Virus record (IMG/VR): IMGVR_UViG_3300030419_008158
Coordinates: 62,001-126,000 of that record
DNA: 64,000 nt
Reading direction: 5' to 3' (one strand)
Shown here: piece by piece, positions 1 to 59,887 of the stretch
Position numbering within the stretch: the first letter of the stretch is position 1
How the letters are laid out: the number at the start of each line of letters is the position of its first letter
The notes under the pieces: model-generated
The model's input: the letters and a program-made list of their open reading frames with translations, nothing else
Database searches by the model: none
Told to the model about the DNA's origin: nothing
Program-made: the position numbers and the translations under genes

Positions 1-1349
1 TGGGACATTTGCTTCTTTTCAGCATCTTCAGCTTCAGCAGCTATTTGTGAGTAGCTAATTCCTTGTTTATCCAGCGCAAAGGCAGCATCGAGACTTTTTG
101 CCGGCATTCTTGTAATCTGAGCCAAGTACATTCTCTGCTGGTAGTTAAAGTCTTTCAAGTTGTGTCCAGCTCTAAAGAATGATTTTCTAATAATGTCTAT
201 TTTTTCAGCCGGATTTTGGGCTGACATTAGCTCGACAGCATCAACATTCATTTGGAATTGCTGAGCCATCTGAGAGGCTGCCTCTACTGTGTCTGAGAAA
301 CCCGCAAAAGACTGCATGATGTTTGCCATGTCTTTTATCTCGAGTCCCAATTTCCTTGCATAAGCTGTAATAGGCGCAAATGCTTTTGGTCCCAAATGAC
401 CGAAGTTCTCAACGTCTTGCGTGAGCTCTTTCATTCCTTTGGCCATGTCCTTGACACCCATGCCAAATCGCTTAGCGGTTCTTACTGCAGTCTTGCTAAA
501 GCGAGTTAGAAATTTCTCAGGATCTTCGCCACGGGCCTCAGCAATTCCCATAAGTTCAGAAAATTCTTCTTTAGAAACCCCCAAACCTCTCTGAAAAATG
601 ATAGCCTTATCACCCATTGTCTCGAAATGTTTTTGCAGTCGATAAAAATTGTCTCCTGCAGCTGCTGCAAGCTCTGTGAGATCTTTAAGAAGAGCAGCAA
701 TACCATCACGACCATACCCATAAACATTTCTAATTGTAAGTCCGGTACCGGCTAAACTTTTACCGCTATGTCTTATTTTGTTAAAGGTGTCACGAACGGA
801 CTTTCCTGGTCCTGATGCTAAATCGCCCATAACATCTCTAAGCTCTTCCATCGCTTCAGCTATGGGACGTCCAGCAGAGCCCTCTTGAGACATTTCAACT
901 AGACTGCCAAAAAGTTTAAAAGGAAACGTAAAGAGAGCAAATGCTGTTTTAGCCAAAGAAGCCGCGATGCTCAAAACCGCACTAGCAACATTTTTAATGA
1001 TGCTGATTCCACCACTAAAAATACTCCCCAAAGAGCCGAATACTTCTCCCAGTACACTAAATCCGCTGCTAGCTTCTTCTGCAGCATCAGCTGCTTCGTT
1101 GAGAGAATCTTCCAGCTCTTTGGCAGCATCGTTGCTGTCTTTTAGCGCATCTGAGCTGTTTCGAAGTGCACTCGTCATGCTGCGAACATTTCTTGTGGAT
1201 CTACTCGAGCCAAGACTAGACGCTAAATTAGATGCTAAGTTACTTTGCGTGGAAAGAGTCTTATTTTGCTCTGCTAATAGCTTGTTTCGTTCAACTAAAG
1301 CAGCATTGATATCTCTTTCAAGCTGTAGCTGTTGTGTTAGATCCGCCAT
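1..1349 (-). CDS. Tail tape measure protein, N-terminal part (runs off the left edge)
   Basis: Absent from the ORF track because truncated. Manual translation from ATG 1349 gives MADLTQQLQLERDINAALVERNKLL... and stays open to position 1. Helical, Ala/Ser/Leu/Lys-rich with a hydrophobic segment (FSVLGEVFGSLGSIFSGGISII). Lies directly downstream of tail tube and chaperones. Confidence 0.85.
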   Translation of the reverse strand, partial: MADLTQQLQLERDINAALVERNKLLAEQNKTLSTQSNLASNLASSLGSSRSTRNVRSMTSALRNSSDALKDSNDAAKELEDSLNEAADAAEEASSGFSVLGEVFGSLGSIFSGGISIIKNVASAVLSIAASLAKTAFALFTFPFKLFGSLVEMSQEGSAGRPIAEAMEELRDVMGDLASGPGKSVRDTFNKIRHSGKSLAGTGLTIRNVYGYGRDGIAALLKDLTELAAAAGDNFYRLQKHFETMGDKAIIFQRGLGVSKEEFSELMGIAEARGEDPEKFLTRFSKTAVRTAKRFGMGVKDMAKGMKELTQDVENFGHLGPKAFAPITAYARKLGLEIKDMANIMQSFAGFSDTVEAASQMAQQFQMNVDAVELMSAQNPAEKIDIIRKSFFRAGHNLKDFNYQQRMYLAQITRMPAKSLDAAFALDKQGISYSQIAAEAEDAEKKQMS

Positions 1350-1354
1350 GTTCA

Positions 1355-1363
1355 CTAAATATC
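1355..1363 (-). promoter_or_regulatory. Putative late promoter motif GATATTTAG upstream of tape measure gene
   Basis: Recurring intergenic ATAnTTA motif, 5 nt upstream of ATG 1349. Confidence 0.6.
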
Positions 1364-2530: not shown

Positions 2531-2566
2531 AAAAAAAAAGGGCTTCGAAAAATTCGAAGCCCTTTT
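2531..2566 (-). terminator. Rho-independent terminator after tail tube gene
   Basis: Perfect stem AAAAGGGCTTCGAA/TTCGAAGCCCTTTT with a 3-nt loop, running into T9 on the minus strand. Confidence 0.9.
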
Positions 2567-2584: not shown

Positions 2585-3073
2585 TTAGTATTGCAGTACG
2601 CAGTTGTCAAAACGAATTGTAAGAGAAATCTCTGTGGGCTCAGATGTTCCGTAATCAAGCGAACCAAAGTCGGCAGCTGTCAAGAATCCACCCTTAATGT
2701 CCCAGAGCTCTACAACCGTTCCAATTGGATCAAGCATCTTGAGCTGAATGTCTCTTTTATAAAAATCCGCGTAGCCGGCGCGGCCCGAGACTGATTCGAA
2801 ATGTGTTCTTATCCATTCCATGACCTGCTGCGCACCAGACGGAGCGATAGGGTCGTGAAGTGTAACGGACAACGTTTCAAAAGATGCCTTACCAGCGACA
2901 AAGCGCTTGTGGTTAATATACGGAATCTCAATTTCTTCAATTGAAACATTGGGACGAGATGCCGTCTTTACGATAAAAGCGTCAATACCCTCGATAGCAA
3001 GAACCCACCTAAACTGTCTTTTGGGCTCAAACTTGTTGGGTAGCATATCTGTAACTGCGAGTGTTTCTGCCAT
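2585..3073 (-). CDS. gp19: Tail tube protein (T4 gp19-like)
   Basis: FEPKRQFRW, RPNVSIEEIEIPYIN, VMEW and YKRDIQLKMLDP..VVELW motifs; 162 aa; follows the sheath genes. Confidence 0.92.
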   Translation of the reverse strand: MAETLAVTDMLPNKFEPKRQFRWVLAIEGIDAFIVKTASRPNVSIEEIEIPYINHKRFVAGKASFETLSVTLHDPIAPSGAQQVMEWIRTHFESVSGRAGYADFYKRDIQLKMLDPIGTVVELWDIKGGFLTAADFGSLDYGTSEPTEISLTIRFDNCVLQY

Positions 3074-3095
3074 TTTAATCTCCTAGCTGTGCATA

Positions 3096-3115: not shown

Positions 3116-6100
3116 TTAGATGCTGTTACTAACAACAAAATCAAGCGACACAAATTCAACCGATCTCGTGGGCTGCAAGAAGATGCGGCCACGAATGGTA
3201 TTGTTCTCGATATCCGCCTGTGTCGTGGTGGTAGTATCGATTATTACTCTAAATCTATCCAATCCGCCTTGTGACTGCACATCGGCGAGAATTGGCTGAA
3301 CTCTTGCTTGAAAAGCCGCAATTGTTGCTGCCTGGTTGGGCTCAAACAAGAATGTTCTAGCAACGTCTCTAACACGGCGTCTGACGTCGATGAGCAGCCT
3401 TCTAACATTAACTCTATCAAGAGCACTTTGTGCTGCCAGTAGAGTCTTCTGTCCAAAGACCGTTACACCGCCCGAAGATGTTACATCACCAATAATTGGG
3501 TTGATGTCTGCTGTGTAGAGATCGTCTCTGTTTTGCTGTAAAAGCTCAACTCCGGGATAAATTGCTGATGGGAGCACGCCTCTGGTAAAGCCAGCGGGTG
3601 CAAACCAAGGATGTGCCAAGGAATCGTTGAGAGAGAATGCTCCCAAAACGACCGCCGTAGCAGGTGCTTTTACATTTGTTCTTGTTGCGGGATCTGCTAC
3701 AACAACATCAGGATAATAAGCAGCTGCAAATGAAGAGTCAAGTGCACGTCCCGAAAATCTATTTATTGTATTTGCAACGCTTGGAATCTGCAAAGAGGAA
3801 GTTACAAAAGTATCAACTTCATCCTTTTCTTCTACATCCATCAGGAAGAGAGCGTCGAATCTTCGCTCTGTGGCTTCCATCGCGTAGTCTGTAACTGCTG
3901 GGTGTCTAATTCCCGGTATTGCCAGGAGCTGTACATCTACATCTTGCTTTGCTTCCATCAAGTCCATGGCTTTTCTATAAGCTGCAACCGTTGGACCAGA
4001 TTTTCCTCCCTGGTTTGTGTCTGTCATTTCTCTTCTAACAGCTGCATCGCTCAGCTTAGCTTTGTCGCTATTGAAGACATTGACTCCGTCCCATCCTCCA
4101 ATCATCGGAAGTGTAAACTTGAGATATTTTTGTGTGGGAACATGCGAGAAATCTTTTGAAGGATCCAAGAATCGAGATCCGATGCCGGCGGTGCCGTCTC
4201 TGTTTGTAAGAGTAGTTGCCGCAACTCCGTTTCTCTGGTACTTGGCAGCTGCCCATTGTTGTGGGTCTGGCCTATCATTTGATCCAGTAATAACCTCGAC
4301 TCTCTCTAGAGAAAAGAAGTTGTTATTGAATTTGTCAGCGTCAAGAACGGATCCAGCAACATCAGCTGTCCCCTCGTTAGACCCTACCCACGGATTCTCG
4401 TTGACCGTGTGGAAATTTGGGAACCACTTAGCAAACGATAGGAGCGAAGTATCGATCTTTTCGTTGGCGTTGGGGCGAGCGATGCTGGTCTTGTTTTCAA
4501 ACTGGACACCCCACGTAAAGTCTACCTTTACATTTTTCCGTGGAGACACACCCACTGCGATGTTTTCTCTCATTGGAATTGGAGGCTGTACGACTCTTGC
4601 CAGCTCATCACCTGAAATGCCTACATCATCTGTAATTGCTTGAGTTGAGTAAAGTCCTGTCAAAATGGAAGTCTTGTCAGACGTTCCAGATGTCACTAGG
4701 TGGTGTACTCCTCTAAATCCTGTTGGGAGAGCAGACGCATCAACTGCACCATTCTTTAACTCAGAGCTTATTTCAACTCTAACAAAGTTTGAAACATTAG
4801 CATAGTCGCCCTCTACAACGACTTTTTGAGCTCCGCTGGACGCATCAAAGTCAAAGAATGTATTTCTATCTCCGATTCGCTTAGCAATATAGTTGTCACT
4901 TGTAAGATCAAGTGAGCACCCTCTGAAGGATTCTACTACTTGAGGATTCAAATCATTGTCGAGGAAACGTCTCACTAGAACATCAAATGTTCCATATTTG
5001 TTGTTAGCTTTGCTTGATGCTTTGACATTTTCAATTGTGATCTTAAATTCACCAGAACCAATTGATCCGTCAGACAGCGTGTGGAATCTAAACAGATTTG
5101 TATTTCGTGCACCAAACTTTTGAGAAACAATAAAGGGAGAAAATGCTGCACTAAATCTATCTTCCCAGTTTTCAAAGTTTGGAGTTCCAACTTTTGATGC
5201 TGTTGTAGTAGTGCCTGTGTTTCTCGCCTGTGAACCTGTAAGGAGCATGACTGCCTCTTCCAGATTGGAACGCGCTCCACCCGATACACCGCCTGTTCTT
5301 GCATCTCCGCATAAGTCAGTGATAACATTAGTTCCTGTTACAACTGCCAAGTTTGTGCTAACATCGTAATGTGCATACAAGTAGTGACCAGCATCCTGAA
5401 TTTTCTTAGGATCTGTGTTGAAGACATTGACGAAGTAGTTCGGTGCAGCCGGGTCCATAGAAGCGGTCAGAACATTGTTGTATTGGTCGTTCTTCTTAAG
5501 ACCGTTGACAAGCATCACGAACTGATTTGTGCTTGTGTTGATCGATCCTATCGGTGCACCGGCGTTCTCGGAAGCAGTAAACACCAAGCTTGCTGCCCTA
5601 TCGTCTGCGACAGCATTGTTGGGCTCAAGCGTTGAACTTAGCCCCAAAACCACTCCGGAAGGCGCCATAAGCACACCTCGAAGAATTGGGTGAGCTATGT
5701 TCTGTCCAGATGTCTGTATGCCTGCTTCACTAAAGATCGTAGATCCGGCTGATTCTGACATAAGAGTGACAAGCATGTGTGTTCTACCAAGGATGCTGTT
5801 TCCATCGTCACCTCCGGAAAAGTTTGATTCCGTGATACCGCCGTTTATCGTCAGGCGATCAGCATCTCCATTTGTGACTGCTGATATTGTTGTGTTGCCA
5901 AGTCGACCTGACGTTACTTGAGCTACCGTAATAGTGTCATCAGTTGCCGTAGTTGTAGACAAAGTTGCAGTCATTCGTCCGCTGTGACCAAGCGAGGACT
6001 CGATAGCAGCTTTGATTTGTGCTGCAATTGTGCCTTCGGAGCTTAATCCCTTGATGTCTGCAAGAATTGAAACCCCGTCTGAGCTCGTATCGCCTGTCTC

Positions 6101-6643
6101 ATAGGAATCAGCTAGCGCGTCGTGAGTCTGAAATTGCCTGCTTGTACCATCTGAGGAGACCAGGGTGAATTTCATGTCTCGTAGCTGTGCTGGGTTGGAT
6201 GTCTTTACAATTATTGTTGCCGTAGCAGCTGTACCAGCTGCTGTGATTGCACCAGCTTTTTCGTTGTTCCCTAGAAGACCGTTGGCTTGCGGGAGTCTAT
6301 CACCGACAACAAAGCCTGCGTTGTTTACACGACCCGCATTGTCACCTGTTGATTTTCTGGCTGTTCCGTCTCCGGCGCCTAGAACACGAACGTAAGTACC
6401 TGCCCCTGCGTTTCTAAGCCACTCTCGCATAGCGATTGGGCCAAATTTTTCCCCATCAGAGTTTCCAAAGACAGAGATGAAGTCTTGGAAGGTTGCAACA
6501 GTAACTGGAACGAATGCAGGACCTCTAACAGCGGTTCCTACCACACCAGCCGGTATGCCTGTTGGGGATATCTGTGTTGGACCCGAAAGATCAATCTCCC
6601 GGGTTACCACGCCTGGGCTAACTGGAAATGTTAACTCTGCCAT
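3116..6643 (-). CDS. gp18: Tail sheath protein, paralog 2 (gp18-like)
   Basis: N-terminal SPGVVTREIDLS and GPAFVP; C-terminal PWFAPAGFTRG, INPI, FGQKTL, ALDRVNVRRLL and FEPN. Confidence 0.95.
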   Translation of the reverse strand: MAELTFPVSPGVVTREIDLSGPTQISPTGIPAGVVGTAVRGPAFVPVTVATFQDFISVFGNSDGEKFGPIAMREWLRNAGAGTYVRVLGAGDGTARKSTGDNAGRVNNAGFVVGDRLPQANGLLGNNEKAGAITAAGTAATATIIVKTSNPAQLRDMKFTLVSSDGTSRQFQTHDALADSYETGDTSSDGVSILADIKGLSSEGTIAAQIKAAIESSLGHSGRMTATLSTTTATDDTITVAQVTSGRLGNTTISAVTNGDADRLTINGGITESNFSGGDDGNSILGRTHMLVTLMSESAGSTIFSEAGIQTSGQNIAHPILRGVLMAPSGVVLGLSSTLEPNNAVADDRAASLVFTASENAGAPIGSINTSTNQFVMLVNGLKKNDQYNNVLTASMDPAAPNYFVNVFNTDPKKIQDAGHYLYAHYDVSTNLAVVTGTNVITDLCGDARTGGVSGGARSNLEEAVMLLTGSQARNTGTTTTASKVGTPNFENWEDRFSAAFSPFIVSQKFGARNTNLFRFHTLSDGSIGSGEFKITIENVKASSKANNKYGTFDVLVRRFLDNDLNPQVVESFRGCSLDLTSDNYIAKRIGDRNTFFDFDASSGAQKVVVEGDYANVSNFVRVEISSELKNGAVDASALPTGFRGVHHLVTSGTSDKTSILTGLYSTQAITDDVGISGDELARVVQPPIPMRENIAVGVSPRKNVKVDFTWGVQFENKTSIARPNANEKIDTSLLSFAKWFPNFHTVNENPWVGSNEGTADVAGSVLDADKFNNNFFSLERVEVITGSNDRPDPQQWAAAKYQRNGVAATTLTNRDGTAGIGSRFLDPSKDFSHVPTQKYLKFTLPMIGGWDGVNVFNSDKAKLSDAAVRREMTDTNQGGKSGPTVAAYRKAMDLMEAKQDVDVQLLAIPGIRHPAVTDYAMEATERRFDALFLMDVEEKDEVDTFVTSSLQIPSVANTINRFSGRALDSSFAAAYYPDVVVADPATRTNVKAPATAVVLGAFSLNDSLAHPWFAPAGFTRGVLPSAIYPGVELLQQNRDDLYTADINPIIGDVTSSGGVTVFGQKTLLAAQSALDRVNVRRLLIDVRRRVRDVARTFLFEPNQAATIAAFQARVQPILADVQSQGGLDRFRVIIDTTTTTQADIENNTIRGRIFLQPTRSVEFVSLDFVVSNSI

Positions 6644-6672
6644 TTTTTCTCCTGCTTGTATCTACTTATCAT

Positions 6673-9600
6673 TTACTCAAAGCTCACGCCACTGTTTGTG
6701 ATGATAAAGTCAATTGCTATAAACTCAACAGCACGGGTTGGAACAACCTGAATTGACGCCCTTAGTCTATTTTGTTCGACGTCAGCTGCTGTATTATTAG
6801 TATCGTCGCAAATGACCTTGAAGGCCTCGATTCCTTGTCCTGCCTGAACTGCTGTTAGCTGTTGAACTGTTTTGGCGACAAAATCAGCTCTTGTAGCTGC
6901 ATTATTCTGCTCAAACACGATGTTGTTTGCGATTCCTGTGACTCGTCGTTTGACGTCCAGAAGCATTCTTCTAACATTGATTCTGTCAAGTGCAGATTGT
7001 GCAACTTGAAGCGTCTTTTGACCAAAAATTACGAAGCCTGCGCGTGGGAACGTGGCAATTGGGTTGATTCTTGCATCGTATAGATCGTCTCGATCATTAG
7101 ATGAAAGTCTATTTTCAACATTTGACACGAAGGACAGCGCGCCTCGACTGAATCCGGCCGGGGCGAACCACACCTGCTTGTCTCTATCATTGAATCCAAG
7201 TGCTCCAACTGCGGCAATTGAAGGTGGTACTTCCACAACTCGATTATTAACATCATCATTGATATTGACATTCGGGAAGTATGTAGCAACGTAATTGTTG
7301 TCAATTGCTCTACTTTCAAACTGTGACACTGTTTTTGTCACATCAGATCTATTGCCTGAGTCATCGTATAGTCTGGTCGTATCTTTGTCGTACTCGGGTA
7401 TGTCCATGAGATACATAGCAAGCCCATACTTTTTGACCGCATCAGACGCGTGATCTGTGACGTAAGAATCTCTAGCTCCGGGCACTGCAAGAAGGTTAAT
7501 TCTTGTTGTGACTGGGTTTGTTATTATGTCAATTCCTTTTTGCAGTGAGTAGACCTGGTTGTTTCTTCGGCCAGCTCCTGCTGGGTTTTTCGGTGCCGTT
7601 CCATCACCACCCAAACCGATGACGGGATCAGTAACATTTTTTCCGCCAACGTCAGCAGACAATGCCCTGTCGCGGAAATAGAATTGATCCTCGTCAAGAA
7701 TATTAACTCCGTCGAACCCACCGTAGAAGATGTTTGTATACTTGGCAAACCCTGTAAAACGATTGAACAGAGCTGAAGACGTTGCAAGAAGCGACGCCAT
7801 TGTAATTCTATTGCTTCTAGTACCGTCATTGACTGTATACGTCGTTGAATTTGGTATTCCGTTTCTTACGTAAGCTGCTTCAAGTATATGTTCTGATGCT
7901 GTTCCTGTTACGCGAGTCGTTACTTCTGAAAGAGTGTCTGCATGATTGTACAGAGCGACTCGTGCTAAAGAAAACTTATTGCAGTTGAACACATCTTTTC
8001 CGGAGCCTGTAACCAGTGCATCCAGCTTCTCAATTCCCACGAATTTTGTGTATGCTCTAACAAGTGGGTTGATGCCTGCACCTTTGTTCGCATCTAAAGC
8101 AGCATTTGTCATTCCTAACACTGAGTCTGTGGAGGAAGACATCGGCGTGGGATTTGTTTTAACACCCCAATACAGACGACCGTCAACTCTTTCATCATCT
8201 CCAGGTTTACCTAAAAAGTCCGGGCTAGAGTTGACTGGCCCTTTTGTTACCTTGACTCTGTAAGGCATGGGAGGAACAATTGAAGCAGATGCGGGTATTC
8301 CGTCCACACCGTTTGTCAATCTTCTAGTAACTGCATCACCATATGTTGTTCCGTCAACTGTAAGAGCAGAAGTAGGCCCATCTGTAAGCGTGTCTGTCGT
8401 CTTGAGAGTGGGTATTCCACGATAGCCAAAGGGAAGTGCATCCTTGGGTGTAATTCCCTTGTCCGCTTGCTCGTTCATGACTATTCTAATTCTGGCAGAA
8501 ACATTTGGATATTTTCCTGTCACAACTAAGCGTCTTTCGTCCGGATCTTCCTGATCGAAATCGAATCTTACTTTTTTGTCTCCGATGAGACGTGCAACAT
8601 AACGATCTGATTTTGGATCGAGAGAGCAGTTTGGATATCTTTCAAGAATTGAAGAATTTCCGTCACTATCTTCAAAAGATCGAACTTGAACTTCAAATGA
8701 TCCAAAGGGCTGCTTTTCATTTGTCGAAGCTTTAAGACCCGCAATTGAAATTTTGAATTTTTCATTTGCATATGCACCATCATCTATACACTCAAAATGG
8801 AAAAGATCAAATTCTGCCTTGCCATAAGGTTGAGAAATGAATGATGTAGTTCTTGGTGTTGTATATCGAGTATCAAATCTACCGAACAGCACTTCAAACT
8901 GATTAGTCAAAGGATCATCACCGGAAGTGTTTTGTGTTCCGCTCAAAATTCTAACTGAAACATTGCCAGAATCTGATATCACTGGGGCTAAGTCGTGCTC
9001 GACAGCAAAATCTGCATAAAGCAAATGCTGCTCTTCTTGGAATCTCAGGGGATCTGTATTGAGAATTTTACCAATGTATGCTCCGTCGCTTGGATCTAGA
9101 GAGGCAGACAAAATACGAAGCCCTGCAAATGTCTCATCGGATCCGTATGTCTTGCCCTCAGAAGAGCTTAGAATTAGCTTGAAATATTTTGACTGCGTTA
9201 GAGAAGATCCACCAATTGCTCCAACTTTTGCTTCGTTTGTAGCCGCTGAAACATTAAAAAATGCATCGTTATCAAGCGTAAGAAGTCTTGTTCCTGAAGA
9301 TAGCAAAACCATCCCTCTGATCAAGCTCATATCATTTGCGCTTACGATGCTGTCGTTGTCTGTAAAGACTGGAAAACCGTTGGCTTCTTCTGCAGCTGCA
9401 TTGTGTCTAGCAGTAATAAACTGAACTGAGCCTTTTGAGGCCATTAGACCGTTTGCACCCGCTGCTGTATCAAGCGTCCCGGACACTATAAACCCTGCAT
9501 TCGAAACGACGCCTGCAGTTCGTGTATTCCCTATATGTGTTGCTGTTTCGTTTGCGCCAGCACCCAAAACTCTAACGTACGTGCAAGCTGTTCGCTGATC

Positions 9601-9822
9601 CAGCCATTTTTGCACTGCATACGGTCCAAATCTTTTGGGATCAAGTGATCCGAACTTTGTTTCAAAGTCTTCAAACGATCCAACTGTAACCGGTACGAAA
9701 GCGGGTCCCTTCTGCGCGGTGCCTACAATTCCCGCTGGAATTCCTGTTACCGACGTGGTTCGACCCGATAAATCGATTTCTTGATCGAAAAATCCTGGCG
9801 ATCTAAAAGTCTGCTCTGCCAT
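6673..9822 (-). CDS. gp18: Tail sheath protein, paralog 1 (gp18-like)
   Basis: SPGFFDQEIDLS, KGPAFVP, WFAPAGFSRG, RINPIATFP, FGQKTLQ and LDRINVRRML. Confidence 0.95.
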   Translation of the reverse strand: MAEQTFRSPGFFDQEIDLSGRTTSVTGIPAGIVGTAQKGPAFVPVTVGSFEDFETKFGSLDPKRFGPYAVQKWLDQRTACTYVRVLGAGANETATHIGNTRTAGVVSNAGFIVSGTLDTAAGANGLMASKGSVQFITARHNAAAEEANGFPVFTDNDSIVSANDMSLIRGMVLLSSGTRLLTLDNDAFFNVSAATNEAKVGAIGGSSLTQSKYFKLILSSSEGKTYGSDETFAGLRILSASLDPSDGAYIGKILNTDPLRFQEEQHLLYADFAVEHDLAPVISDSGNVSVRILSGTQNTSGDDPLTNQFEVLFGRFDTRYTTPRTTSFISQPYGKAEFDLFHFECIDDGAYANEKFKISIAGLKASTNEKQPFGSFEVQVRSFEDSDGNSSILERYPNCSLDPKSDRYVARLIGDKKVRFDFDQEDPDERRLVVTGKYPNVSARIRIVMNEQADKGITPKDALPFGYRGIPTLKTTDTLTDGPTSALTVDGTTYGDAVTRRLTNGVDGIPASASIVPPMPYRVKVTKGPVNSSPDFLGKPGDDERVDGRLYWGVKTNPTPMSSSTDSVLGMTNAALDANKGAGINPLVRAYTKFVGIEKLDALVTGSGKDVFNCNKFSLARVALYNHADTLSEVTTRVTGTASEHILEAAYVRNGIPNSTTYTVNDGTRSNRITMASLLATSSALFNRFTGFAKYTNIFYGGFDGVNILDEDQFYFRDRALSADVGGKNVTDPVIGLGGDGTAPKNPAGAGRRNNQVYSLQKGIDIITNPVTTRINLLAVPGARDSYVTDHASDAVKKYGLAMYLMDIPEYDKDTTRLYDDSGNRSDVTKTVSQFESRAIDNNYVATYFPNVNINDDVNNRVVEVPPSIAAVGALGFNDRDKQVWFAPAGFSRGALSFVSNVENRLSSNDRDDLYDARINPIATFPRAGFVIFGQKTLQVAQSALDRINVRRMLLDVKRRVTGIANNIVFEQNNAATRADFVAKTVQQLTAVQAGQGIEAFKVICDDTNNTAADVEQNRLRASIQVVPTRAVEFIAIDFIITNSGVSFE

Positions 9823-9857
9823 GTCTTCTCCTGTTCGTTACTTACGAAGCTCTGTTG

Positions 9858-9926: not shown

Positions 9927-11261
9927 TTAAATAACTTCCCTGTAAACGACTTCACCTTTTCTACTGGTACGTGTCTTTACATAGGACCTAACGTCCTCAT
10001 TGTCACCCGTAAAAGGATTAACTTCATTTTCTAGAACTGTAGTTCTTACAGGTGTTCCACTCCCTCCCTTTTCTTGCGAACCCGTCACAAAAGCTGGGTA
10101 AGAGACGATATCATTTGATGCACCGCCAATCAGGGCAGTATCTTCCTGGTCAAAATTGGTCACTCCTGGGTGTCGAGGATCAGTGGAAGACCTACTTCTT
10201 GCACCTGCTATCGATTGACCTGGAAGTGGCGCATTAATATTTCTATCGTCTAAAATATAATCATTCGGATCGCCACTTGGAATGTTAGAATTTTTTACCT
10301 GATTTTCTATCTCACCATTGACAAAATTCATCCCAAATGTAAGTTGAGGTGCTGATGTTGTTGAGCGAAGTCTGTTTGGAGCACCCGGATATGTTTCTCC
10401 CAACAAATAACCAGGAACCTTTAGGGTAAATGATGTTCTGATTATTCTCTCGTCATCTGTAAAATCATCAAAATTATTGCCTGGATCAAAATTTGATTCC
10501 AAATAAGCTACAAATGTATATCCTTTTTTTGTTTCTAGACGAAAAGTTCGACCACCATAACTTTGCATGTTAGACATTATTGCCATTTCGATATCATTCA
10601 TTTGCTGGATGTACTGTGCCCATATCGTTACTTCATATGTTGCTGTTATGAACTGTACGGGAGGCATTTCGATAACTTCGAATATATTGTTCTTGTTGTC
10701 TAAATCCAACAAGTTTCCTCTTCTAACACCCAAAGGAACAAGCGAGCCTGCCCTTCTAGAAGCTATTCGACCGGGTTGTGCATTCTGGTATGCTTTTGAT
10801 CCTGTTGTAATAAATGCAGCCTGGGTCGGAAGGTCATCAGAGCTCACCAAGCCGAGCTTATTTACAATTCTTTGATATCTTGCATCCTTTTTTGAAAGCT
10901 TCTTTTTTATAATATGTGGTACCGACTGGTTAGATGCAAGACCCATCTCGTTTTGCGACACCACACCCTGTCTCATCATTGACACTACAGGTAAAATTAG
11001 GGCATTATTTTTATCTCTTAGTGGTTTTTTTCTCGCAATAAGCGCAAATCTTTCACCTGCAGCAAAAACCACAGGAACCCTTTTTGTTTTCTTTTTGTAT
11101 GTGTAGTGAATTGGTAGATCACGATCAAATAAATCAAACACAGCACGATCTATATCTTCTATGGTGCAGCTAGGAATCTCTAGAATTGCATCTGATGCAT
11201 TTTCTTTGTCAATTGGTACCGTACCTTGGAGGTGAGCCTCTGTTGTCTCTCTAATACTCAT
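9927..11261 (-). CDS. Tail completion / sheath stabiliser (gp15-like)
   Basis: VPVVFAAGERF, LILPVVSM, P....TYEVTIW..YIQQMNDI and ERIIRTSFTL match gp15-like proteins; located between neck and sheath genes. Confidence 0.7.
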   Translation of the reverse strand: MSIRETTEAHLQGTVPIDKENASDAILEIPSCTIEDIDRAVFDLFDRDLPIHYTYKKKTKRVPVVFAAGERFALIARKKPLRDKNNALILPVVSMMRQGVVSQNEMGLASNQSVPHIIKKKLSKKDARYQRIVNKLGLVSSDDLPTQAAFITTGSKAYQNAQPGRIASRRAGSLVPLGVRRGNLLDLDNKNNIFEVIEMPPVQFITATYEVTIWAQYIQQMNDIEMAIMSNMQSYGGRTFRLETKKGYTFVAYLESNFDPGNNFDDFTDDERIIRTSFTLKVPGYLLGETYPGAPNRLRSTTSAPQLTFGMNFVNGEIENQVKNSNIPSGDPNDYILDDRNINAPLPGQSIAGARSRSSTDPRHPGVTNFDQEDTALIGGASNDIVSYPAFVTGSQEKGGSGTPVRTTVLENEVNPFTGDNEDVRSYVKTRTSRKGEVVYREVI

Positions 11262-11935: not shown

Positions 11936-13105
11936 TCACCCTATAAAAATTGCGCGGCCGTTAGGTATCGGTATTTTCTTGAGAATGTTTGTCAAGCTGT
12001 CAGAAGCCGCGGCTTCGTCCTCAAGCATCTTACTGTAAGTTAGCTCTTCCAGCATTTCAGACAACTTGGTTCTTAAGCTTTCTTTTTCTTCTCTTCCCTG
12101 AGAAATCAGATCTGCGCCGTTTAACTGCAAGTCTCCTCCCGGAATTGGCACAGAAGAAAACTTACTCCTTACAAGCCCTAAAAGCTCCTTTGACAAAGCT
12201 ATTGTATACTGCCTGACCCACTGTCGGCCGACAGAGTTCACCTTAGAGAAAGAAAGATTTCCAAAAGGTACATTTGACATGTTTGAAACCCCATAAATTC
12301 CGGGATCATCAATAGATGGATTCATGGGGTCTGGAGCAAACTGGACTCTCATCCATAATTTTTTTGGATCAGACTTTGTTGGAACGGGAAAAATTCTAAT
12401 ATTTTGCCCGATCACCTTGTAAGAATAATTTGATCGCCTCACCCTGCTCGACATGTCCAGCTGTCCGCCGCGCAGTACGTCCTCGAATACAGGTAAAACA
12501 TAAAAAACAGTTTCAGGCGTAAAGGACTCAAAAGAAAACTCATTGTTCAGGTAGTTTATTGCGCTTGTGCTGTCAAAAAATCTATAAGCTGCCTGGCCTG
12601 AAAAATGAAACACTTCCATGATTTTCATTTTCGAAGAAGATGTGTTTAGACTGCTTGAAAAAATTAAGTTACCAGAATCGTCTTTTAGTGTGTCATAAAT
12701 GTTATAATCTTGCTGATCCTTTACTAGAGTAATAGAGCCTGAGATTGCATTATAAGAGCCCCCGAGGCCCGCTTCCATAGCATACGGCTCAGCTCTTCTA
12801 AGCATAAACTCCAAATTTTCTCTTGGGAATCTTTGCTCGAACCCTTCTAGCGTACCTGTAGCAAATCCCAATAAGTTTGCTAACTGTGATTTAATCTGGT
12901 ATTGGTTTATGAGTGAGCCATATTCACAAAAAGACTCTTCAAAGCATGCCCATATCTGCTTTTTTGTCAATTCCACGCTAAGAACATCATCACCCAGCTT
13001 TCTCTTGACAAACGTGACCATTGCGTCAGCTTCTGTTTGAAACTGCGTGTCGCTGTCAAATAAACCGAACGGGGTGGGATTTAGCGTGTTTAGAAAACTT
13101 GTCAT
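11936..13105 (-). CDS. Neck protein (gp13-like head-tail adaptor)
   Basis: RKLGDDVLSVEL, WVRQYTIALSKELLGLVRSKF and PGGDLQLNG are gp13 hallmarks. Start moved to ATG 13105 behind GGAG. Confidence 0.85.
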   Translation of the reverse strand: MTSFLNTLNPTPFGLFDSDTQFQTEADAMVTFVKRKLGDDVLSVELTKKQIWACFEESFCEYGSLINQYQIKSQLANLLGFATGTLEGFEQRFPRENLEFMLRRAEPYAMEAGLGGSYNAISGSITLVKDQQDYNIYDTLKDDSGNLIFSSSLNTSSSKMKIMEVFHFSGQAAYRFFDSTSAINYLNNEFSFESFTPETVFYVLPVFEDVLRGGQLDMSSRVRRSNYSYKVIGQNIRIFPVPTKSDPKKLWMRVQFAPDPMNPSIDDPGIYGVSNMSNVPFGNLSFSKVNSVGRQWVRQYTIALSKELLGLVRSKFSSVPIPGGDLQLNGADLISQGREEKESLRTKLSEMLEELTYSKMLEDEAAASDSLTNILKKIPIPNGRAIFIG

Positions 13106-13120
13106 TGGCAACTCCAATGA

Positions 13121-14442: not shown

Positions 14443-16323
14443 TTAGATAATGTTCATATCGAGGCACGTAACTGTACCGTAGAAGTCGGAACGAACCATC
14501 TTCTTACCGTATCGAGTCATGACACCCTTTCTCGGGGTGAAGTCCTCAGGAGCGAAGATAGTAGGCGTTACGATCAGCGGTACGTACGGAGCATAGACGT
14601 AGCCAGTCTCGAGGTAGCTTCCACCCTTGTAGCCGACGAGGACCTTGTTCCGTGGGAAGTAAGGATCCTTGTAGACTGTGAAGCGGTTGCTAAGAGTACC
14701 AACCTTGTCAGCACCGATGACCATTCCGCTTACCTGTCCGTCTCCATCCAGTGAGAACGAAGGCTTGAAGTAAACCGAAGCCTCGAGGATGGTGGCAACG
14801 TCAGGACCGACAACAACAAAGTTTGCCGAGCCGCGGAGCGTCTTACGGTGAATCTCATTTGCAACATCGATGATGGTTTCGATGAGAGTCTCGTACCACT
14901 CACGAACGGTACCAGTGAAGTTCGGACCAGGAGCATTGGAGCCAGTTCTAAGAACTTCTGCACCAGTTTTCTTGTTGACGAACTTACCGGGCGAACGTGA
15001 CCAGTAGTAAGTAGCCGCACCTGCCTGGGTGAGAAGATCATTGAGGATCTCTCGATCAAGCTCTAGAGCGATCTGCTCGGACAGAATCTGAGTAAGCTCA
15101 ACCTCAGCGTCGAGGCTGTGGTAAGCATTCAAGTCCTGTGCCAGTTCTGGAGACCAACGAGCGCGAAGCTTGCGAGTCTCAGCAACAACAGCAATACTCT
15201 CCACCTTGATATCAATCTCTGGGATTGCAGGTGAAGGTGTCGACCCAAAGTCAGATTCAAACGCCGGGATGACGAGAGTGTCTGCAGCATTGGAATCGCT
15301 ATCTAGACCAGCTGAAAGGACCTTACCTAAGTTCATGGTTCCGGCAGCAGTTCCGGCAGCATTTGCACCTGAGCAAATCATCAGCAGCGCAGCATTTGTC
15401 GTGCTAGCTGTTACGAGAGGATCGGGTGTAAATGTAGAACCATCCCAAGTACCAAGCTGGTTGAGACGACGAACGTTAGCTGATGTTCCTCGCTGAATGG
15501 CCTTTCCGTCGGTGTCGTTTCCAACTGCCTTGTACGGACCAACTGCTGGGATTGTGAACTCCTTCACAAGTGAAAGATCAGCATTGTTGAAGTCAGAGCT
15601 ATTATCAAGATCAACGAGGACCGCTGTGTAAACAGCATCACCGCTACCTTCACCGGCACCAACTGAGTTGTTCTCAATAGCATTGGTAATCTGCGGATCA
15701 AACTGCAAGAGCTTTCCGTCTGTACCGGTTGCGACAAGAACGTTTCCAACTGCGAATGTACCCGTTCCAGCATCAGCACCTGATGCTAGCAGTGTTACGT
15801 CAATATTTCCGTAAACACGGGAGAATCCGGATCCAGCAAGGTCATATTGACCGCCAACTGCCAACGATCCAGAGCGAACGCCCTTACCAGCAGGATCATT
15901 GTAAATTGAAGAACCTGTGGGGTAAGGATCGGAATCTCCGACTGATCCAGCCAATGCACCACCGTATGTGTAGTCCAAGTAAAAGAGCAGACCGGAAGGA
16001 AGGCTCATGGGCTGGATGGAAACGAGATCGTTAGCGATGAGTCCGCCAAAAACGCGTCGAACGATCGGAAAAGCGATGTTTGTGAAACCACGAAGATCGC
16101 CTGAAGAAGAAAGGTTGCCGCCACCGGTTGAAACCGAGGAAGCCTCCTTAAGAACCTGACTCGCCTGATTTTCAAGCATGCGAGCCATATTTTCACGGTG
16201 TGTACCGTCGAGGCCTCGAAGCAAACCGGTTCGGTTCCACTTCTCGACCAACTGCTTATTCTGAGAGCCCAAGTGGCGAGCTCGGATCCCCTCAGTCAGC
16301 ATTTCAAGATTAAAACTAGACAT
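14443..16323 (-). CDS. gp23: Major capsid protein (T4 gp23-like)
   Basis: LLRGL..ENMARMLENQ, FPIVRRVF, VSIQPMSLPSGLLF, TRKLRARWSPELAQDLNAYH, YAPYVPL and PRKGVMTRY. Confidence 0.97.
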   Translation of the reverse strand: MSSFNLEMLTEGIRARHLGSQNKQLVEKWNRTGLLRGLDGTHRENMARMLENQASQVLKEASSVSTGGGNLSSSGDLRGFTNIAFPIVRRVFGGLIANDLVSIQPMSLPSGLLFYLDYTYGGALAGSVGDSDPYPTGSSIYNDPAGKGVRSGSLAVGGQYDLAGSGFSRVYGNIDVTLLASGADAGTGTFAVGNVLVATGTDGKLLQFDPQITNAIENNSVGAGEGSGDAVYTAVLVDLDNSSDFNNADLSLVKEFTIPAVGPYKAVGNDTDGKAIQRGTSANVRRLNQLGTWDGSTFTPDPLVTASTTNAALLMICSGANAAGTAAGTMNLGKVLSAGLDSDSNAADTLVIPAFESDFGSTPSPAIPEIDIKVESIAVVAETRKLRARWSPELAQDLNAYHSLDAEVELTQILSEQIALELDREILNDLLTQAGAATYYWSRSPGKFVNKKTGAEVLRTGSNAPGPNFTGTVREWYETLIETIIDVANEIHRKTLRGSANFVVVGPDVATILEASVYFKPSFSLDGDGQVSGMVIGADKVGTLSNRFTVYKDPYFPRNKVLVGYKGGSYLETGYVYAPYVPLIVTPTIFAPEDFTPRKGVMTRYGKKMVRSDFYGTVTCLDMNII

Positions 16324-21035: not shown

Positions 21036-21852
21036 TTGAACTCATCTCCTCGAGCAAGTGTATAAGATGTAATGTCTTGCTGACAACGTTGTCAGATTTT
21101 TCTTCCGGTAATGATTCGACATTTTTTCTAACATCATCTATGCTCTCACTAAGTAACTTATTTTCGCACGATCTCTTAAATTTTATCAATGCAGCCTCTG
21201 CTCTGACTTTTGTCTCCTTGACTAGCTCGATAAATTCTTCTTCACTACCTAAAATAGACGTCTCGAGAATCTTTTTCTGCTCTTTGCTGATCTGGTTTTT
21301 ATATTTGCTTTCAAATTTTTCAAACATAATTTTTCGGACCAGAGGATCAAAATTGTCACTCTCTGTTGATTGTGTGTTCTCGCTTCTAGACAACCACTCA
21401 ACTATCACTTCTTCATATTTTGCCTTTTCTGTATAATCTAAGTGAGACGATCCTCGCCACTCATTTAGCAAAGATTGAACAGTTGCAAATAAACGATAAT
21501 TTGAAATCTTGAGATCATAAAATCTCATAGATTCACTCATTGTTGTGTTGATATCCTTGATTAGTAGAGATTTTTCTTGTCGAAGTCTCTGTCTATCATG
21601 ATTTTTTGCTGCTCTTTTGCTTTCTTTTAGAATTCTTTCCGCGATAGAGCGTGAGCCTACTGGAACATTCACCATTGCATTAAAGAGACGAAATTCTCTG
21701 TAAAGCTCCGTTCCAGGTCTAAAATGTTTTGCTATAATTTGAACTGCCGTCTCCGCAGATTTCTTGTCTTCGGCGATCAGAGAACTAGCGACGTATCTAA
21801 CTAATTGCTCATGAATCAAACCGACGTTGCGTTTTTTGTTATGCTTCGCCAT
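21028..21852 (-). CDS. Hypothetical protein between portal and protease
   Basis: 274-aa helical ORF beginning KHNKKRNVGLIHEQL; overlaps both neighbours. Confidence 0.7.
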   Translation of the reverse strand: MAKHNKKRNVGLIHEQLVRYVASSLIAEDKKSAETAVQIIAKHFRPGTELYREFRLFNAMVNVPVGSRSIAERILKESKRAAKNHDRQRLRQEKSLLIKDINTTMSESMRFYDLKISNYRLFATVQSLLNEWRGSSHLDYTEKAKYEEVIVEWLSRSENTQSTESDNFDPLVRKIMFEKFESKYKNQISKEQKKILETSILGSEEEFIELVKETKVRAEAALIKFKRSCENKLLSESIDDVRKNVESLPEEKSDNVVSKTLHLIHLLEEMSSNE

Positions 21853-23758
21853 TTCGGTCTTCTCCGTTGTTGTCGACCTCTTCTGATAAGAGAGATTTTC
21901 TATTAATATTTATAATGCTGTCCATAGATAACATCATTCTTTGTAGATCATTGGTAAGTCTAGGGCGCCCAAGTTCACTATTGTGCTCTGGCATGGGGTT
22001 TCCTAAAAAGTCGGAATCAAAAGGTTTGTTAAGAGAATCTTGGCCGCGACCAGATTTTCCAACAGAGACCATTTTGGCAAAATCGGGCATGTGAGTAGAT
22101 CCCGGGCCATTTCTTACTTTTGTACTAGCTTTTATAGGACCGCCAAATGCATTTAGGCGACGCTCAGCCTTTTCAGGGGCATTTTCATCGTCCATAGATA
22201 AGTCTAAAAAGTAATCATCATTATCTTCAATTTCTTCTTTTTCATCATCGGGTGTGCTTCCTGGAAGTGCTGTCAAAAGATCACCCTCGGGTCTATCTCC
22301 CGAAAATAAATCTCCAGCTTCATCTCCGCCTTCATCTCCCCCACCTTCATCAGCAGCTGCATCAGTTGCCCCGGCTTCGACTTCCGCGTCTTCGATCTTA
22401 TCAGCAATTCTTCCGTCTTTAATGTCAGATATTTCTTCAGATGTAAGGCCTAATATGTTTCTTCTAAGCCATGCCCTATCGACAACACCTTCTGGTGCAG
22501 TCCCTGCTATCTCAAACTGTGATCTTATAAGTTCTAATTTTTGTTGTTGTGCAACTGAAGATGGGTTTGTCAAGAGAAGACTAAAATCTGACAACTGCTC
22601 ACCTTCAAATCCATGACAATATAAGTGAATCATGGCCAACTTATTTAGTTCCGCGATCATTGTCTTTTGAATTCTCTGAATTGTTCTAGAAAATCTAATG
22701 TCTTCTTGTGCTAAAGTTGCTTTAGCACCTACATCTTCATCGTAACCCAAATAAGCTCGAGGAATCTTTAGCGCCGCGAAAAGTTTTTTCTGTATGTACT
22801 GAACGTCTTCTATTGCTGCTGTATTTTGGCCGCCGGCGAGCGTATCAATTTTTGTCCCTGTTTCACCGCCTCGAACAGGCATAAAATAATCTTCATCTAC
22901 TGAGTATGGATTATAACGATAGTCTACCTGACCATTTCCTTTGTCTATTACAGGCTGTCGCTTTAGGCTGGTCTGTGCTTGTTGCATATAGTTTTCAATT
23001 TCATCGGGTGCAATATTACCCACGTCAATATAGAATACTCTGCGCTCGGGAGCTCTAATCACTCGATAGACAAGCATGGCGTCCTCCATAAGAATTAGCT
23101 GGCGCCAAATTCTTCTCGCTGATTCTAAGACCGAGGCGCCGTACGGAAGAAACGCATCGTTTCCTAACAACCTAAAGTGACTTATTTGCCAATTTTCTAA
23201 AACTTGGTTTCCCTGCGTTATCCATCGAAATCTAACTGCCATTGGGTCTTCTGCATCAAACCCTTCTTCTCTTTCAATTTCACTAATTGATATTGGATAT
23301 GCGTTGATGACGCCATATTCCGGAGATATATCATTAAAGAGAAAAAAGTCACCATACTTGCATAGATTTCTTGCCCACATCACCAAATTAAAGTCAACAT
23401 TGAGAACATCATAAAAAAGCTCCTCAAGAATCTCTTGAACTCTGTTGTTTTCCGAGTATATGTGAAGAACTCTTCCCTTGTCATCACCGCTCACTGTCTC
23501 TTCTGCGTATATGTCTAATGCAGCTCCAATTTCAGGAGTTGCCTCCATTTCGCTAAAGTCGCTATACCGAGACATTCTATCAAATGCCCCATACGCGCTT
23601 AATGTACTGTTATATACGTCACTGTGTGCTTTTCTAAAAACTTCTAATGCTGAAGATGCGCCGGTCTGGCTAAAGTCGCGCACTTTTCGGCGAACAACCG
23701 GTCCAGAGCGGAACAGCTTTGTAAGCCTGGTAAAAAGTGATCCCTTGTTATCTGCCAC
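21839..23758 (-). CDS. gp20: Portal protein (T4 gp20-like)
   Basis: LMEDAMLVYRVIRAPERRVFYIDVGN, EDYFMPVRGG, TLAGG and LFAALKIP; acidic C-terminal extension. Confidence 0.95.
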   Translation of the reverse strand: MADNKGSLFTRLTKLFRSGPVVRRKVRDFSQTGASSALEVFRKAHSDVYNSTLSAYGAFDRMSRYSDFSEMEATPEIGAALDIYAEETVSGDDKGRVLHIYSENNRVQEILEELFYDVLNVDFNLVMWARNLCKYGDFFLFNDISPEYGVINAYPISISEIEREEGFDAEDPMAVRFRWITQGNQVLENWQISHFRLLGNDAFLPYGASVLESARRIWRQLILMEDAMLVYRVIRAPERRVFYIDVGNIAPDEIENYMQQAQTSLKRQPVIDKGNGQVDYRYNPYSVDEDYFMPVRGGETGTKIDTLAGGQNTAAIEDVQYIQKKLFAALKIPRAYLGYDEDVGAKATLAQEDIRFSRTIQRIQKTMIAELNKLAMIHLYCHGFEGEQLSDFSLLLTNPSSVAQQQKLELIRSQFEIAGTAPEGVVDRAWLRRNILGLTSEEISDIKDGRIADKIEDAEVEAGATDAAADEGGGDEGGDEAGDLFSGDRPEGDLLTALPGSTPDDEKEEIEDNDDYFLDLSMDDENAPEKAERRLNAFGGPIKASTKVRNGPGSTHMPDFAKMVSVGKSGRGQDSLNKPFDSDFLGNPMPEHNSELGRPRLTNDLQRMMLSMDSIININRKSLLSEEVDNNGEDRNGEA

Positions 23759-33143: not shown

Positions 33144-33171
33144 ATGACCTCACGTTTTTCTCGCAAAACGA

Positions 33172-34428: not shown

Positions 34429-34440
34429 CTTATATCACCC

Positions 34441-35136: not shown

Positions 35137-35166
35137 GTAACTACTCCCATTTGCTCCTGCTGTAGG

Positions 35167-35174
35167 TAAATATC
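35167..35174 (-). promoter_or_regulatory. Putative late promoter motif GATATTTA
   Basis: Consensus copy in the 45-nt intergenic gap. Confidence 0.55.
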
Positions 35175-35181
35175 GTAAAAA

Positions 35182-40820: not shown

Positions 40821-40827
40821 AAGCTAC

Positions 40828-59885: not shown

Positions 59886-59887
59886 TT

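What the first reader, a model, noticed from the sequence alone, without database searches (positions are those of the whole stretch)
3116..9822. Two tandem, divergent, full-length giant tail sheath paralogs
Seen: 1049-aa and 1175-aa sheath genes, each with complete N- and C-terminal sheath motifs and its own RBS, but only one tube gene. Both are much larger than T4 gp18 (about 660 aa). Inference: a heteropolymeric sheath (alternating or position-specific rings), as in some eCIS with several sheath paralogs, or two alternative tail types.
Basis: partly seen in the sequence, partly recalled or inferred. Interest (0 to 1): 0.6.

Follow-up and report, generated by a model that had tools for sequence, protein, structure and literature searches.

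The report
Two-gene tail sheath in jumbo phages
An uncultured 284-kb phage carries two adjacent, very old, equally well-kept copies of the tail sheath gene (and a third copy far away), and every sampled relative keeps the pair, so its contractile tail is probably built from more than one kind of sheath protein, which has been shown in only one other phage group.

Summary
Window 6673-9822(-) encodes sheath A (1049 aa) and 3116-6643(-) encodes sheath B (1175 aa). They are full-length paralogs, about 31% identical overall and 52% in the N-terminal 145 aa. Both AF2 models match a T4-like sheath structure from end to end (Z about 35). Each gene has its own AGGAGA ribosome-binding site. They lie 29 nt apart and are followed by the genome's only tube gene and a strong terminator.

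New findings:
- The pair comes from one ancient duplication. A and B form reciprocally monophyletic clades (support 100/100).
- All 35 related metagenomic loci that span gp15-like to tube keep A then B.
- Both evolve at the same non-synonymous rate, with synonymous sites saturated.
- The genome holds a third full-length paralog, C (1114 aa), about 195 kb away among non-structural genes. C is a faster-evolving offshoot of B with changed terminal arms, and its own orthologs keep the same gene neighbourhood.

My best reading is one contractile sheath built from both A and B, with C as a low-copy specialised subunit. This parallels phage PaBG's two-component sheath and the Pvc2/3/4 sheath of eCIS (bacterial phage-tail-like injection systems). 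The arrangement of subunits is not resolved, and no protein-level evidence was available. "Two alternative tails" is not supported. I rate it a new variant of a known kind, of moderate interest.

The parts
6673..9822 (-). Sheath paralog A, 1049 aa (P0002), the first of the tandem pair to be transcribed
   Evidence: ORF; Pfam PF17482 at 39 bits and PHROG 23 at E 7e-58; AF2 pLDDT 87.5; VIA Z 35.1 to T4-like sheath 9f4a_SA; A clade monophyletic with support 100
3116..6643 (-). Sheath paralog B, 1175 aa (P0001)
   Evidence: ORF; Pfam PF17482 at 28.7 bits and PHROG 23 at E 1e-55; AF2 pLDDT 81.5; VIA Z 35.5 to 9f4a_SA; B clade monophyletic with support 100
5789..6226 (-). Insert of about 145 aa in B (residues about 140-285). 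A lacks it, and so do most B orthologs
   Evidence: Alignment columns filled in fewer than half of B orthologs; AF2 pLDDT below 50 over 184-281; no Pfam family
9827..9832 (-). AGGAGA ribosome-binding site of A, 4 nt before the ATG at 9822
   Evidence: Read directly from the sequence
6644..6672 (-). 29-nt A-B spacer holding B's AGGAGA site (6648-6653); no terminator
   Evidence: Sequence; terminator scan; median A-B spacer in 84 related loci is 48 nt
2585..3073 (-). The only tail tube gene, 162 aa (P0003), with an AGGAGA site at 3079-3084
   Evidence: PHROG 4542 'tail tube protein' at E 3.8e-31; single match in the whole genome; sequence
2536..2566 (-). Strong intrinsic terminator (14-bp stem plus T run) closing the A-B-tube unit
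   Evidence: Terminator scan
9927..11261 (-). gp15-like (tail sheath stabiliser/terminator) candidate, always directly upstream of A in relatives
   Evidence: Only a sub-threshold Pfam match to T4-gp15_tss (15.9 bits against a cut-off of 25, E 0.007); orthologs conserved upstream of A in related loci

Best explanation
A and B are both working, abundant sheath subunits that co-polymerise around the single tube into one contractile sheath made of two components. They are co-transcribed with the tube gene from one late unit and translated from matching ribosome-binding sites, so they should be made in similar amounts. Their shared inner core (N-terminal and C-terminal parts, including the strand-exchange 'handshake' arms) would let them sit in one lattice. 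Their divergent middle domains, each conserved within its own paralog, would give the sheath surface two alternating faces. The most likely arrangement is a regular one, for example alternating hexameric layers as shown for Pvc2/Pvc3. The third paralog C arose later from B, sits far from the tail genes, evolves about three times faster and has altered N- and C-terminal arms. It is most likely a low-copy specialised subunit, such as a terminal ring at the baseplate or the neck. Shown here: gene structure, fold, age of the duplication, universal retention, equal constraint and co-transcription signals. Inferred: co-assembly, stoichiometry, arrangement, and the role of C.
For: Both copies have full sheath folds.
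There was a single ancient duplication. A and B are reciprocally monophyletic (SH-aLRT 100/100) with matching subclades, and they sit outside the single-sheath phages Mel-JY01 and immuto.
35 of 35 loci spanning gp15-like to tube keep A-B, and complete or near-complete relatives of 305 and 320 kb hold exactly A plus B.
The rate of change is equal: dN is 0.162 (A) against 0.161 (B) versus L008, with synonymous sites saturated (pS 0.72-0.84).
The Shine-Dalgarno core is identical, the spacer is 29 nt, there is no internal terminator, and a strong terminator follows the tube gene.
Codon usage resembles MCP/tube: B ranks 12th and A 33rd of 194 genes, while C ranks 98th, close to the gp15-like candidate (105th) and near portal (120th).
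The A and B consensus sequences agree most at the N-terminus (0.70) and the C-terminus (0.55-0.65) and least in the middle (0.17-0.32), yet the middle is conserved within each paralog (0.5-0.7).
There is only one tube, tape measure, hub and gp15-like gene.
Complex prediction of the A and B C-terminal domains gave weak support: score 0.50, best control 0.00, runs agreeing in at least 90% of contacts, partner pLDDT at least 72. The mark was reached by 58 of 80 solved complexes and 2 of 110 mismatched pairs, but at 0.60 or under by only 7 of those 80 and by both mismatches that passed.
Precedents exist. PaBG has two sheath proteins, both listed in its virion proteome (PMC7412058). PlPVC1 has a Pvc4 initiator ring followed by alternating Pvc2/Pvc3 layers (PMC12546770).
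For C: its clade is monophyletic (100) and sister (98) to the window's B subclade, with longer branches. Its changed arms and a conserved 25-35 aa C-terminal insert are seen. Its neighbourhood DUF192 - C - small ORF - NUDIX is conserved.
Against: The N-arm motif is conserved even in single-sheath relatives (Mel-JY01, immuto), so the similarity of the A and B arms is not specific evidence for co-assembly.
The complex prediction is only 'weak support'. It may reflect memory of solved sheath lattices, and it cannot separate hetero- from homo-polymer.
Operon position and the Shine-Dalgarno site do not fix stoichiometry; eCIS initiator-ring paralogs also lie in the same operon.
The codon-bias ranking is a soft proxy, and its reference set includes MCP and tube themselves.
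Confidence: 0.6

Rival explanations
1. Division of labour by position. One of A or B forms nearly the whole sheath, and the other forms only one or a few specialised rings next to the baseplate or the neck, like the Pvc4/Afp4 initiator ring.
For: eCIS precedent for an initiator ring made by a sheath paralog encoded in the same operon (PMC12546770). The inferred tail is very long (tape measure 1845 aa), so its ends may need special adaptors. The paralog-specific middle domains are conserved.
Against: A and B have the same Shine-Dalgarno core, both have codon usage like abundant virion proteins (ranks 33 and 12 of 194), and their dN is equal. The handshake arms of both are of the standard type, whereas the paralog with altered arms and average codon usage is C, which fits the minor-ring role better.
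Confidence: 0.2
2. Alternative or non-lattice use. A and B build two different tail forms in different virions, or one copy is an outer decoration or fibre-docking layer rather than part of the contractile lattice.
For: The divergent outer domains could serve different surfaces.
Against: There is one tube, one tape measure, one hub and one gp15-like gene, and no regulatory break between A and B. Both keep the complete inner core and arms that make up the lattice. The large neighbouring structural ORFs are not duplicated as a set.
Confidence: 0.07
3. Redundancy. One copy is a dispensable duplicate on its way to being lost.
For: Tandem duplicates are often short-lived. One relative (L069) has an extra recent B copy.
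Against: The duplication predates the whole clade, in which A orthologs have diverged to 42% identity. Both copies are intact in all 35 of 35 spanning loci and show the same low dN with saturated dS.
Confidence: 0.03

Closest known systems
Two-component tail sheath of Pseudomonas jumbo phage PaBG (gp76 and gp213; Kurochkina et al. 2018, cited in PMC7412058)
   Same: A jumbo myophage with two full-length paralogous sheath proteins that arose by gene duplication and are about 30-40% identical. In PaBG both are listed as bands in the virion proteome.
   Different: The PaBG genes are unlinked (orf76 and orf213), about 58 kDa each, and belong to a different lineage; the PaBG sheath is only about 12% identical in the fold match. 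The pair here is tandem, 1049 and 1175 aa, lies in the T4-like superfamily, and arose separately because the A/B node excludes Mel-JY01, immuto and S-H38. A third paralog exists here. Virion presence is untested here.
eCIS sheaths with three paralogs (PlPVC1 Pvc2/Pvc3/Pvc4; AFP Afp2/3/4)
   Same: There are three sheath-family paralogs. In PlPVC1 two alternate as layers in the trunk and one forms the initiator ring, and one trunk paralog carries an extra surface knob (PMC12546770). This offers a direct structural analogy for A/B (trunk) and C (special ring). The core fold is shared, with Z 28-29 to Pvc/Afp chains.
   Different: Those are bacterial tail-like particles without a capsid, with subunits of about 350-400 aa. 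This is a phage with terminase, portal and capsid genes, its subunits are three times larger, and C is encoded about 195 kb from A/B. The arrangement here is unknown.
T4 gp18-type single-protein sheath
   Same: Best structural matches are T4-like sheaths (Foldseek to T4 9mkb at E 5e-18; VIA Z about 35 to the T4-like KP1 sheath). The gene order gp15-like, sheath, tube, hub resembles that of related phages.
   Different: T4 and the nearest cultured relatives (Mel-JY01, immuto) have one sheath gene. Here about 600 extra residues per subunit and two or three paralogs are present.

Membership tests
Phage contractile tail sheath (gp18-like; Pfam Phage_sheath_1C, PHROG 23) | C-terminal sheath domain above the curated threshold | tested here: met
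   A scores 39.0 bits and B 28.7 bits against a cut-off of 26.9. C scores 23.1 bits, below the cut-off, because of a C-terminal insert.
Phage contractile tail sheath (gp18-like; Pfam Phage_sheath_1C, PHROG 23) | gp18-like core fold formed by the N- and C-terminal segments together | tested here: met
   VIA Z 35.1 (A, model 18-1031) and 35.5 (B, model 20-1162) to 9f4a_SA.
Phage contractile tail sheath (gp18-like; Pfam Phage_sheath_1C, PHROG 23) | Encoded next to a tail tube gene within a tail module | tested here: met
   The order gp15-like - A - B - tube - hub - tape measure holds for A and B. It does not hold for C, which lies between DUF192 and NUDIX genes.
Phage contractile tail sheath (gp18-like; Pfam Phage_sheath_1C, PHROG 23) | Polymerises around the tube and contracts | not testable with these tools
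   Needs virions or recombinant polysheaths.
Two-component phage sheath (PaBG type) | Two full-length paralogous sheath genes in one phage genome, kept by selection | tested here: met
Two-component phage sheath (PaBG type) | Both proteins present in the virion sheath | not testable with these tools
Two-component phage sheath (PaBG type) | Descent from the same duplication as PaBG gp76/gp213 | not tested
   PaBG sequences were not placed in the tree. An independent origin is inferred: the A/B node excludes Mel-JY01, immuto and S-H38, and PaBG's duplication is placed within its own group (PMC7412058).
eCIS multi-paralog sheath (Pvc2/3/4, Afp2/3/4) | Part of a capsid-less bacterial tail-like particle locus | tested here: not met
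   Terminase, portal and major capsid genes lie in the same window, and the record is a 284-kb virus genome.
eCIS multi-paralog sheath (Pvc2/3/4, Afp2/3/4) | Alternating trunk layers plus an initiator ring made by different paralogs | not testable with these tools
   Only an analogy is possible. The complex prediction was limited to C-terminal domains and gave weak support.

The most novel reading that the evidence does not exclude
This phage clade has independently evolved a three-paralog sheath that mirrors eCIS architecture. A and B would alternate along a very long tail, doubling the axial repeat and presenting two different outer surfaces. C, with rewired handshake arms, would form a single adaptor ring at the baseplate or neck. 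A more radical alternative is that C is not a virion protein at all but forms a sheath-like tubular assembly inside the infected cell, given that it sits among non-structural genes (NUDIX and DUF192 here; HSP20, HSP70 and RNA ligase in relatives).
Probability: 0.2. Interest if true: 0.7.

Novelty: new variant of a known kind. Interest (0 to 1): 0.5.

Why it matters
Contractile sheaths of phages are treated as homopolymers, and the PaBG group was described as 'unique' in having two components. Here an independent and much more widespread case appears: about 100 related metagenomic loci were recovered, and wherever the region is fully covered the pair is present, including complete or near-complete genomes of 284-320 kb, some from Tara Oceans data sets. 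The pair has been kept under equal constraint since the clade began. Together with LR756508, the triple tandem in L069 and the C lineage, this suggests that sheath gene duplication recurs in large-genome myophages. It gives structural biologists a defined target for asking how two or three subunit types are ordered in one helical lattice, and whether this relates to very long tails or to docking of fibres.

Tried and rejected
- The site-heterogeneous (C20) tree of 79 x 991 did not finish in two 300-s calls. LG+G4 quick trees with SH-aLRT support only were used instead.
- Megablast of the region against cultured phages found nothing, and no cultured phage covers 80% or more of A.
- A search for close C orthologs in IMG/VR by peptide patterns returned only B-type genes at 41% identity or less. 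C orthologs were then found with the word search.
- Pfam on B's insert and on the middle domains of A and B gave no family.
- The sigma-70 promoter scan was not enriched over shuffles (17 against 17.7), and I saw no shared late-promoter motif upstream of A, C, MCP or portal.
- dN/dS ratios could not be computed properly because synonymous sites are saturated. Only dN and pS are reported.
- I first considered the similarity of the A and B N-arms as evidence for co-assembly. I dropped it after seeing the same motif in single-sheath relatives.
- I tested whether other large tail ORFs are duplicated, which would support 'two tails'. They are not recognisable paralogs.
- The complex prediction gave only weak support and is cited as such.
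Full report
**Setting.** The window is bases 62001-126000 of a 284,429-bp IMG/VR virus record that CheckV rates 100% complete. Almost all genes lie on the minus strand (308 of 341 crude ORF calls). The window carries a structural module of T4-superfamily type:
- large terminase at 23818-25416, portal at 21839-23758 and major capsid protein at 14443-16323
- a head-tail adaptor-like gene at 11936-13117 and a gp15-like gene at 9927-11261
- the two sheath genes, a tube gene at 2585-3073 and a T4_baseplate/hub gene at 1613-2467
- a tape-measure candidate that runs out of the window, 1845 aa in the genome

By capsid protein and terminase, the nearest cultured phages are only 40-48% identical: Microcystis phage Mel-JY01, Flavobacterium phage immuto and Rhodothermus phage RM378. 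The uncultured 484-kb phage LR756508 is similarly distant. The lineage has no close cultured relative in the collection searched.

- ORFs of 1049 aa (A, 6673-9822) and 1175 aa (B, 3116-6643) lie head to tail on the minus strand, 29 nt apart.
- They are paralogs along their whole length: 31% identity over about 950 aa (E 6e-114) and 52% over the first 145 aa.
- Both pass Pfam Phage_sheath_1C and match PHROG 23 strongly.
- AF2 models built on alignments of 76 and 84 relatives are confident (pLDDT 87.5 and 81.5).
- Foldseek ranks T4 gp18 first for A (E 5e-18).
- VIA-align gives Z 35.1 for A (438 aligned, rmsd 3.0, model 18-1031) and Z 35.5 for B (448 aligned, rmsd 3.4, model 20-1162) against the T4-like KP1 sheath. 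Each therefore has a complete core.
- About 600 residues per protein are extra outer domains with no Pfam match.
- B here carries a further insert of about 145 aa (residues about 140-285) that most B orthologs lack and that was modelled with low confidence.
- Each gene has an AGGAGA site 4-6 nt before its ATG, and all three products (A, B and tube) start with Met-Ala-Glu.
- No terminator-like site lies between A, B and tube, and a 14-bp-stem terminator follows the tube gene.
- The genome has a single tube gene.
- Size alone is not unusual: sheaths of 930-1490 aa are known in cyanophages and others, and several PHROG sheath families are 900-1100 long.

**A third paralog.** Searching the whole genome with A found a third full-length sheath-family gene, C (1114 aa, P0005), at genome 262399-265743 on the minus strand, about 195 kb from the pair. 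It sits between a DUF192 gene and a NUDIX gene, with a GNAT acetyltransferase gene a little further upstream.

**Age and retention of the A/B pair.**
- Pattern scans of IMG/VR with A and with C returned about 105 loci from many metagenomes.
- In all 35 loci that span from the gp15-like gene to the tube gene the order is gp15-like, A, B, tube. One of them (L069) has A, B, B'.
- In 84 loci A is followed directly by B, with a median spacer of 48 nt. No locus shows a lone copy where the partner should be visible.
- A complete 305-kb relative with terminal repeats and a 320-kb relative contain exactly A and B.
- A maximum-likelihood tree (79 rows, 991 columns, LG+G4, SH-aLRT) puts all A orthologs in one clade (100) and all B orthologs in another (100). 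The two join at a node (100) that excludes Mel-JY01, LR756508, immuto and S-H38. The same subclades recur in both halves.
- The pair therefore stems from one duplication at the base of this clade, and the copies have diverged in step since then without conversion or loss.
- Against the nearest relative, dN is 0.162 for A and 0.161 for B, with synonymous sites saturated (pS 0.72-0.84). Other pairs give similar values, and the tube gene is more constrained still. Both copies are under strong, equal purifying selection.

**Where A and B agree and differ.** In a joint alignment the A and B consensus residues agree most at the N-terminus (0.70 in the first ~45 residues) and in the C-terminal ~300 residues (0.46-0.65). 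They agree least in the middle (0.17-0.32). Within each paralog those middle regions are nevertheless conserved (0.5-0.7). The shared parts are the ones that form the inner lattice and the strand-exchange arms in solved sheaths; this rests on established knowledge from T4, pyocin and PVC structures, and PMC12546770 describes the handshakes. One caution applies. The N-arm motif (S-P-G..E-x-D-L-S ... G-P-A-F-V-P) is also kept in the single-sheath relatives Mel-JY01 and immuto, so its similarity between A and B does not by itself argue for co-assembly.

**The C lineage.**
- The word search found C-type orthologs at 42-76% identity, clearly separated from B-types at 40% or less. Some come from Tara data sets.
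- Their neighbourhood is conserved: DUF192, C, a 68-aa ORF and NUDIX, then HSP20, HSP70, RNA ligase, adenylosuccinate synthase and IMPDH.
- In a second tree the 17 C sequences form one clade (100), sister (98) to the B subclade that contains the window's B, and their branches are about three times longer. C is thus a later duplicate of B that moved away and sped up.
- Across the C clade the N-arm lacks the E-x-D-L-S motif, the C-terminal region has a conserved 25-35 aa insert, and the last strand is acidic. This explains why C falls below the Pfam threshold.
- Its Shine-Dalgarno site is weaker.
- Its codon usage ranks 98th of 194 genes on a score trained on MCP+tube, close to the gp15-like candidate (105th) and near portal (120th). 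B ranks 12th and A 33rd. This is a soft proxy.

**How it most likely works.** A and B are made together with the tube, in similar amounts, and both look like abundant virion proteins. There is only one tube, tape measure, hub and gp15-like gene. The simplest reading is one sheath built from both. PlPVC1 shows how this can work. A Pvc4 ring starts the sheath, Pvc2 and Pvc3 then alternate layer by layer, and all are linked by the same handshakes. Pvc3 carries an extra knob thought to dock fibres (PMC12546770). PaBG shows that a phage can carry two sheath proteins in its virion (PMC7412058). By analogy, A and B would alternate in the trunk and present two outer faces, and C, with rewired arms and low-copy signatures, would form a terminal ring.

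A complex prediction of the A (740-1049) and B (866-1175) C-terminal domains gave weak support:
- The score was 0.50 and the best control 0.00.
- The runs agreed in at least 90% of contacts, and the partner's pLDDT was at least 72.
- The mark was reached by 58 of 80 solved complexes and 2 of 110 mismatched pairs. At 0.60 or under it was reached by only 7 of those 80 and by both mismatches that passed.
- The result may reflect memory of solved sheaths, and it cannot tell hetero- from homo-contacts.

The arrangement, the stoichiometry and the role of C are inferences. The long tape measure (1845 aa) suggests a very long tail, also by inference.

**Rivals.**
- A minor-ring role for A or B is possible but fits C better.
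- Alternative tails, or a non-lattice decoration, are disfavoured by the single set of other tail genes, the absence of a regulatory break and the complete cores.
- Redundancy is excluded in practice by universal retention under equal constraint.

**Comparison and novelty.** The kind of system, a contractile sheath made from paralogs, is known from PaBG-group phages and from eCIS. This case differs in several ways:
- It arose independently, in the T4-like superfamily.
- The genes are tandem.
- The subunits are about 1000-1200 aa.
- The pair is conserved across a large uncultured clade.
- A sublineage has a third, relocated paralog with altered arms.

LR756508 has its own pair of 824-aa copies, 29% identical to each other, one of which lacks the N-arm motif. 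L069 has a recent extra B. Duplication of the sheath gene therefore seems to recur in large myophages. I rate this a new variant of a known kind with moderate interest. It would rise if virion data showed an ordered three-component sheath.

**Limits.**
- There are no protein or expression data.
- The trees use LG+G4 with SH-aLRT support only.
- C was not folded.
- Host and habitat are not established beyond the presence of Tara-derived relatives.

Noticed in passing
Outside the window: genome G000:C1:262399-265743 (-), = L003:1312-4656 (-): A third full-length sheath-family paralog, C (1114 aa), lies between DUF192 and NUDIX genes. Its own orthologs (42-76% identity) keep the same neighbourhood, and its N- and C-terminal arms are altered.
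   Followed up: yes
L069:1017-10958 (IMGVR_UViG_3300012953_000017); also L054 and L100: A relative carries three tandem sheath genes (A 1075 aa, B 1191 aa, B' 1015 aa) before the tube gene. The two B copies are a recent lineage-specific duplication (support 99-100).
   Followed up: partly
L030:4020-6491 and L030:7509-9980 (LR756508.1, 484-kb uncultured phage): An apparently independent pair of 824-aa sheath paralogs, 29% identical and 1 kb apart, with the tube gene about 7 kb downstream. The first copy lacks the usual N-arm motif and sits on a long branch.
   Followed up: partly
L075:4443-5186, L042:4370-5191, L074:526-1329 (between A and B in relatives): Free-standing GIY-YIG homing endonuclease genes are inserted between the two sheath genes in several relatives (Pfam GIY-YIG E 8e-10 and 9e-8 for L075 and L042; L074 has the motif only). 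Other relatives have unrelated ORFs of 256-356 aa in the same gap.
   Followed up: partly
window 47048-50632 (-) and 51617-55084 (-): Two large ORFs (1194 and 1155 aa), separated by a 327-aa ORF, each have an N-terminal Laminin_G_3 (concanavalin-like) domain but are otherwise not recognisably similar. They are probably fibre or baseplate proteins.
   Followed up: partly
window 30654-44067 (-): A run of large ORFs (829, 418, 231, 591, 1288 and 1079 aa). The five that were scanned (all but the 231-aa one) have no PHROG match, and the three scanned against Pfam (829, 1288, 1079 aa) have no Pfam match. They lie between the SbcC-like nuclease gene and the baseplate region.
   Followed up: no
Outside the window: genome about 186,000-195,400: An island of genes with much higher G+C (0.51-0.60; GC3 up to 0.83) than the genome (mean GC3 0.36), which suggests recently acquired DNA.
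   Followed up: no
Genome 57818-63355 (-); window 3-1355 is its 5' part: The tape-measure candidate is 1845 aa, which would imply an unusually long contractile tail (roughly 270 nm at about 1.5 Å per residue; inference only).
   Followed up: no
L112 and L113 (relatives carrying C): Relatives encode HSP70, HSP20, a ribosomal protein L7/L12-like gene, ThyX, adenylosuccinate synthase, IMPDH and T4-type RNA ligase near the C gene.
   Followed up: no
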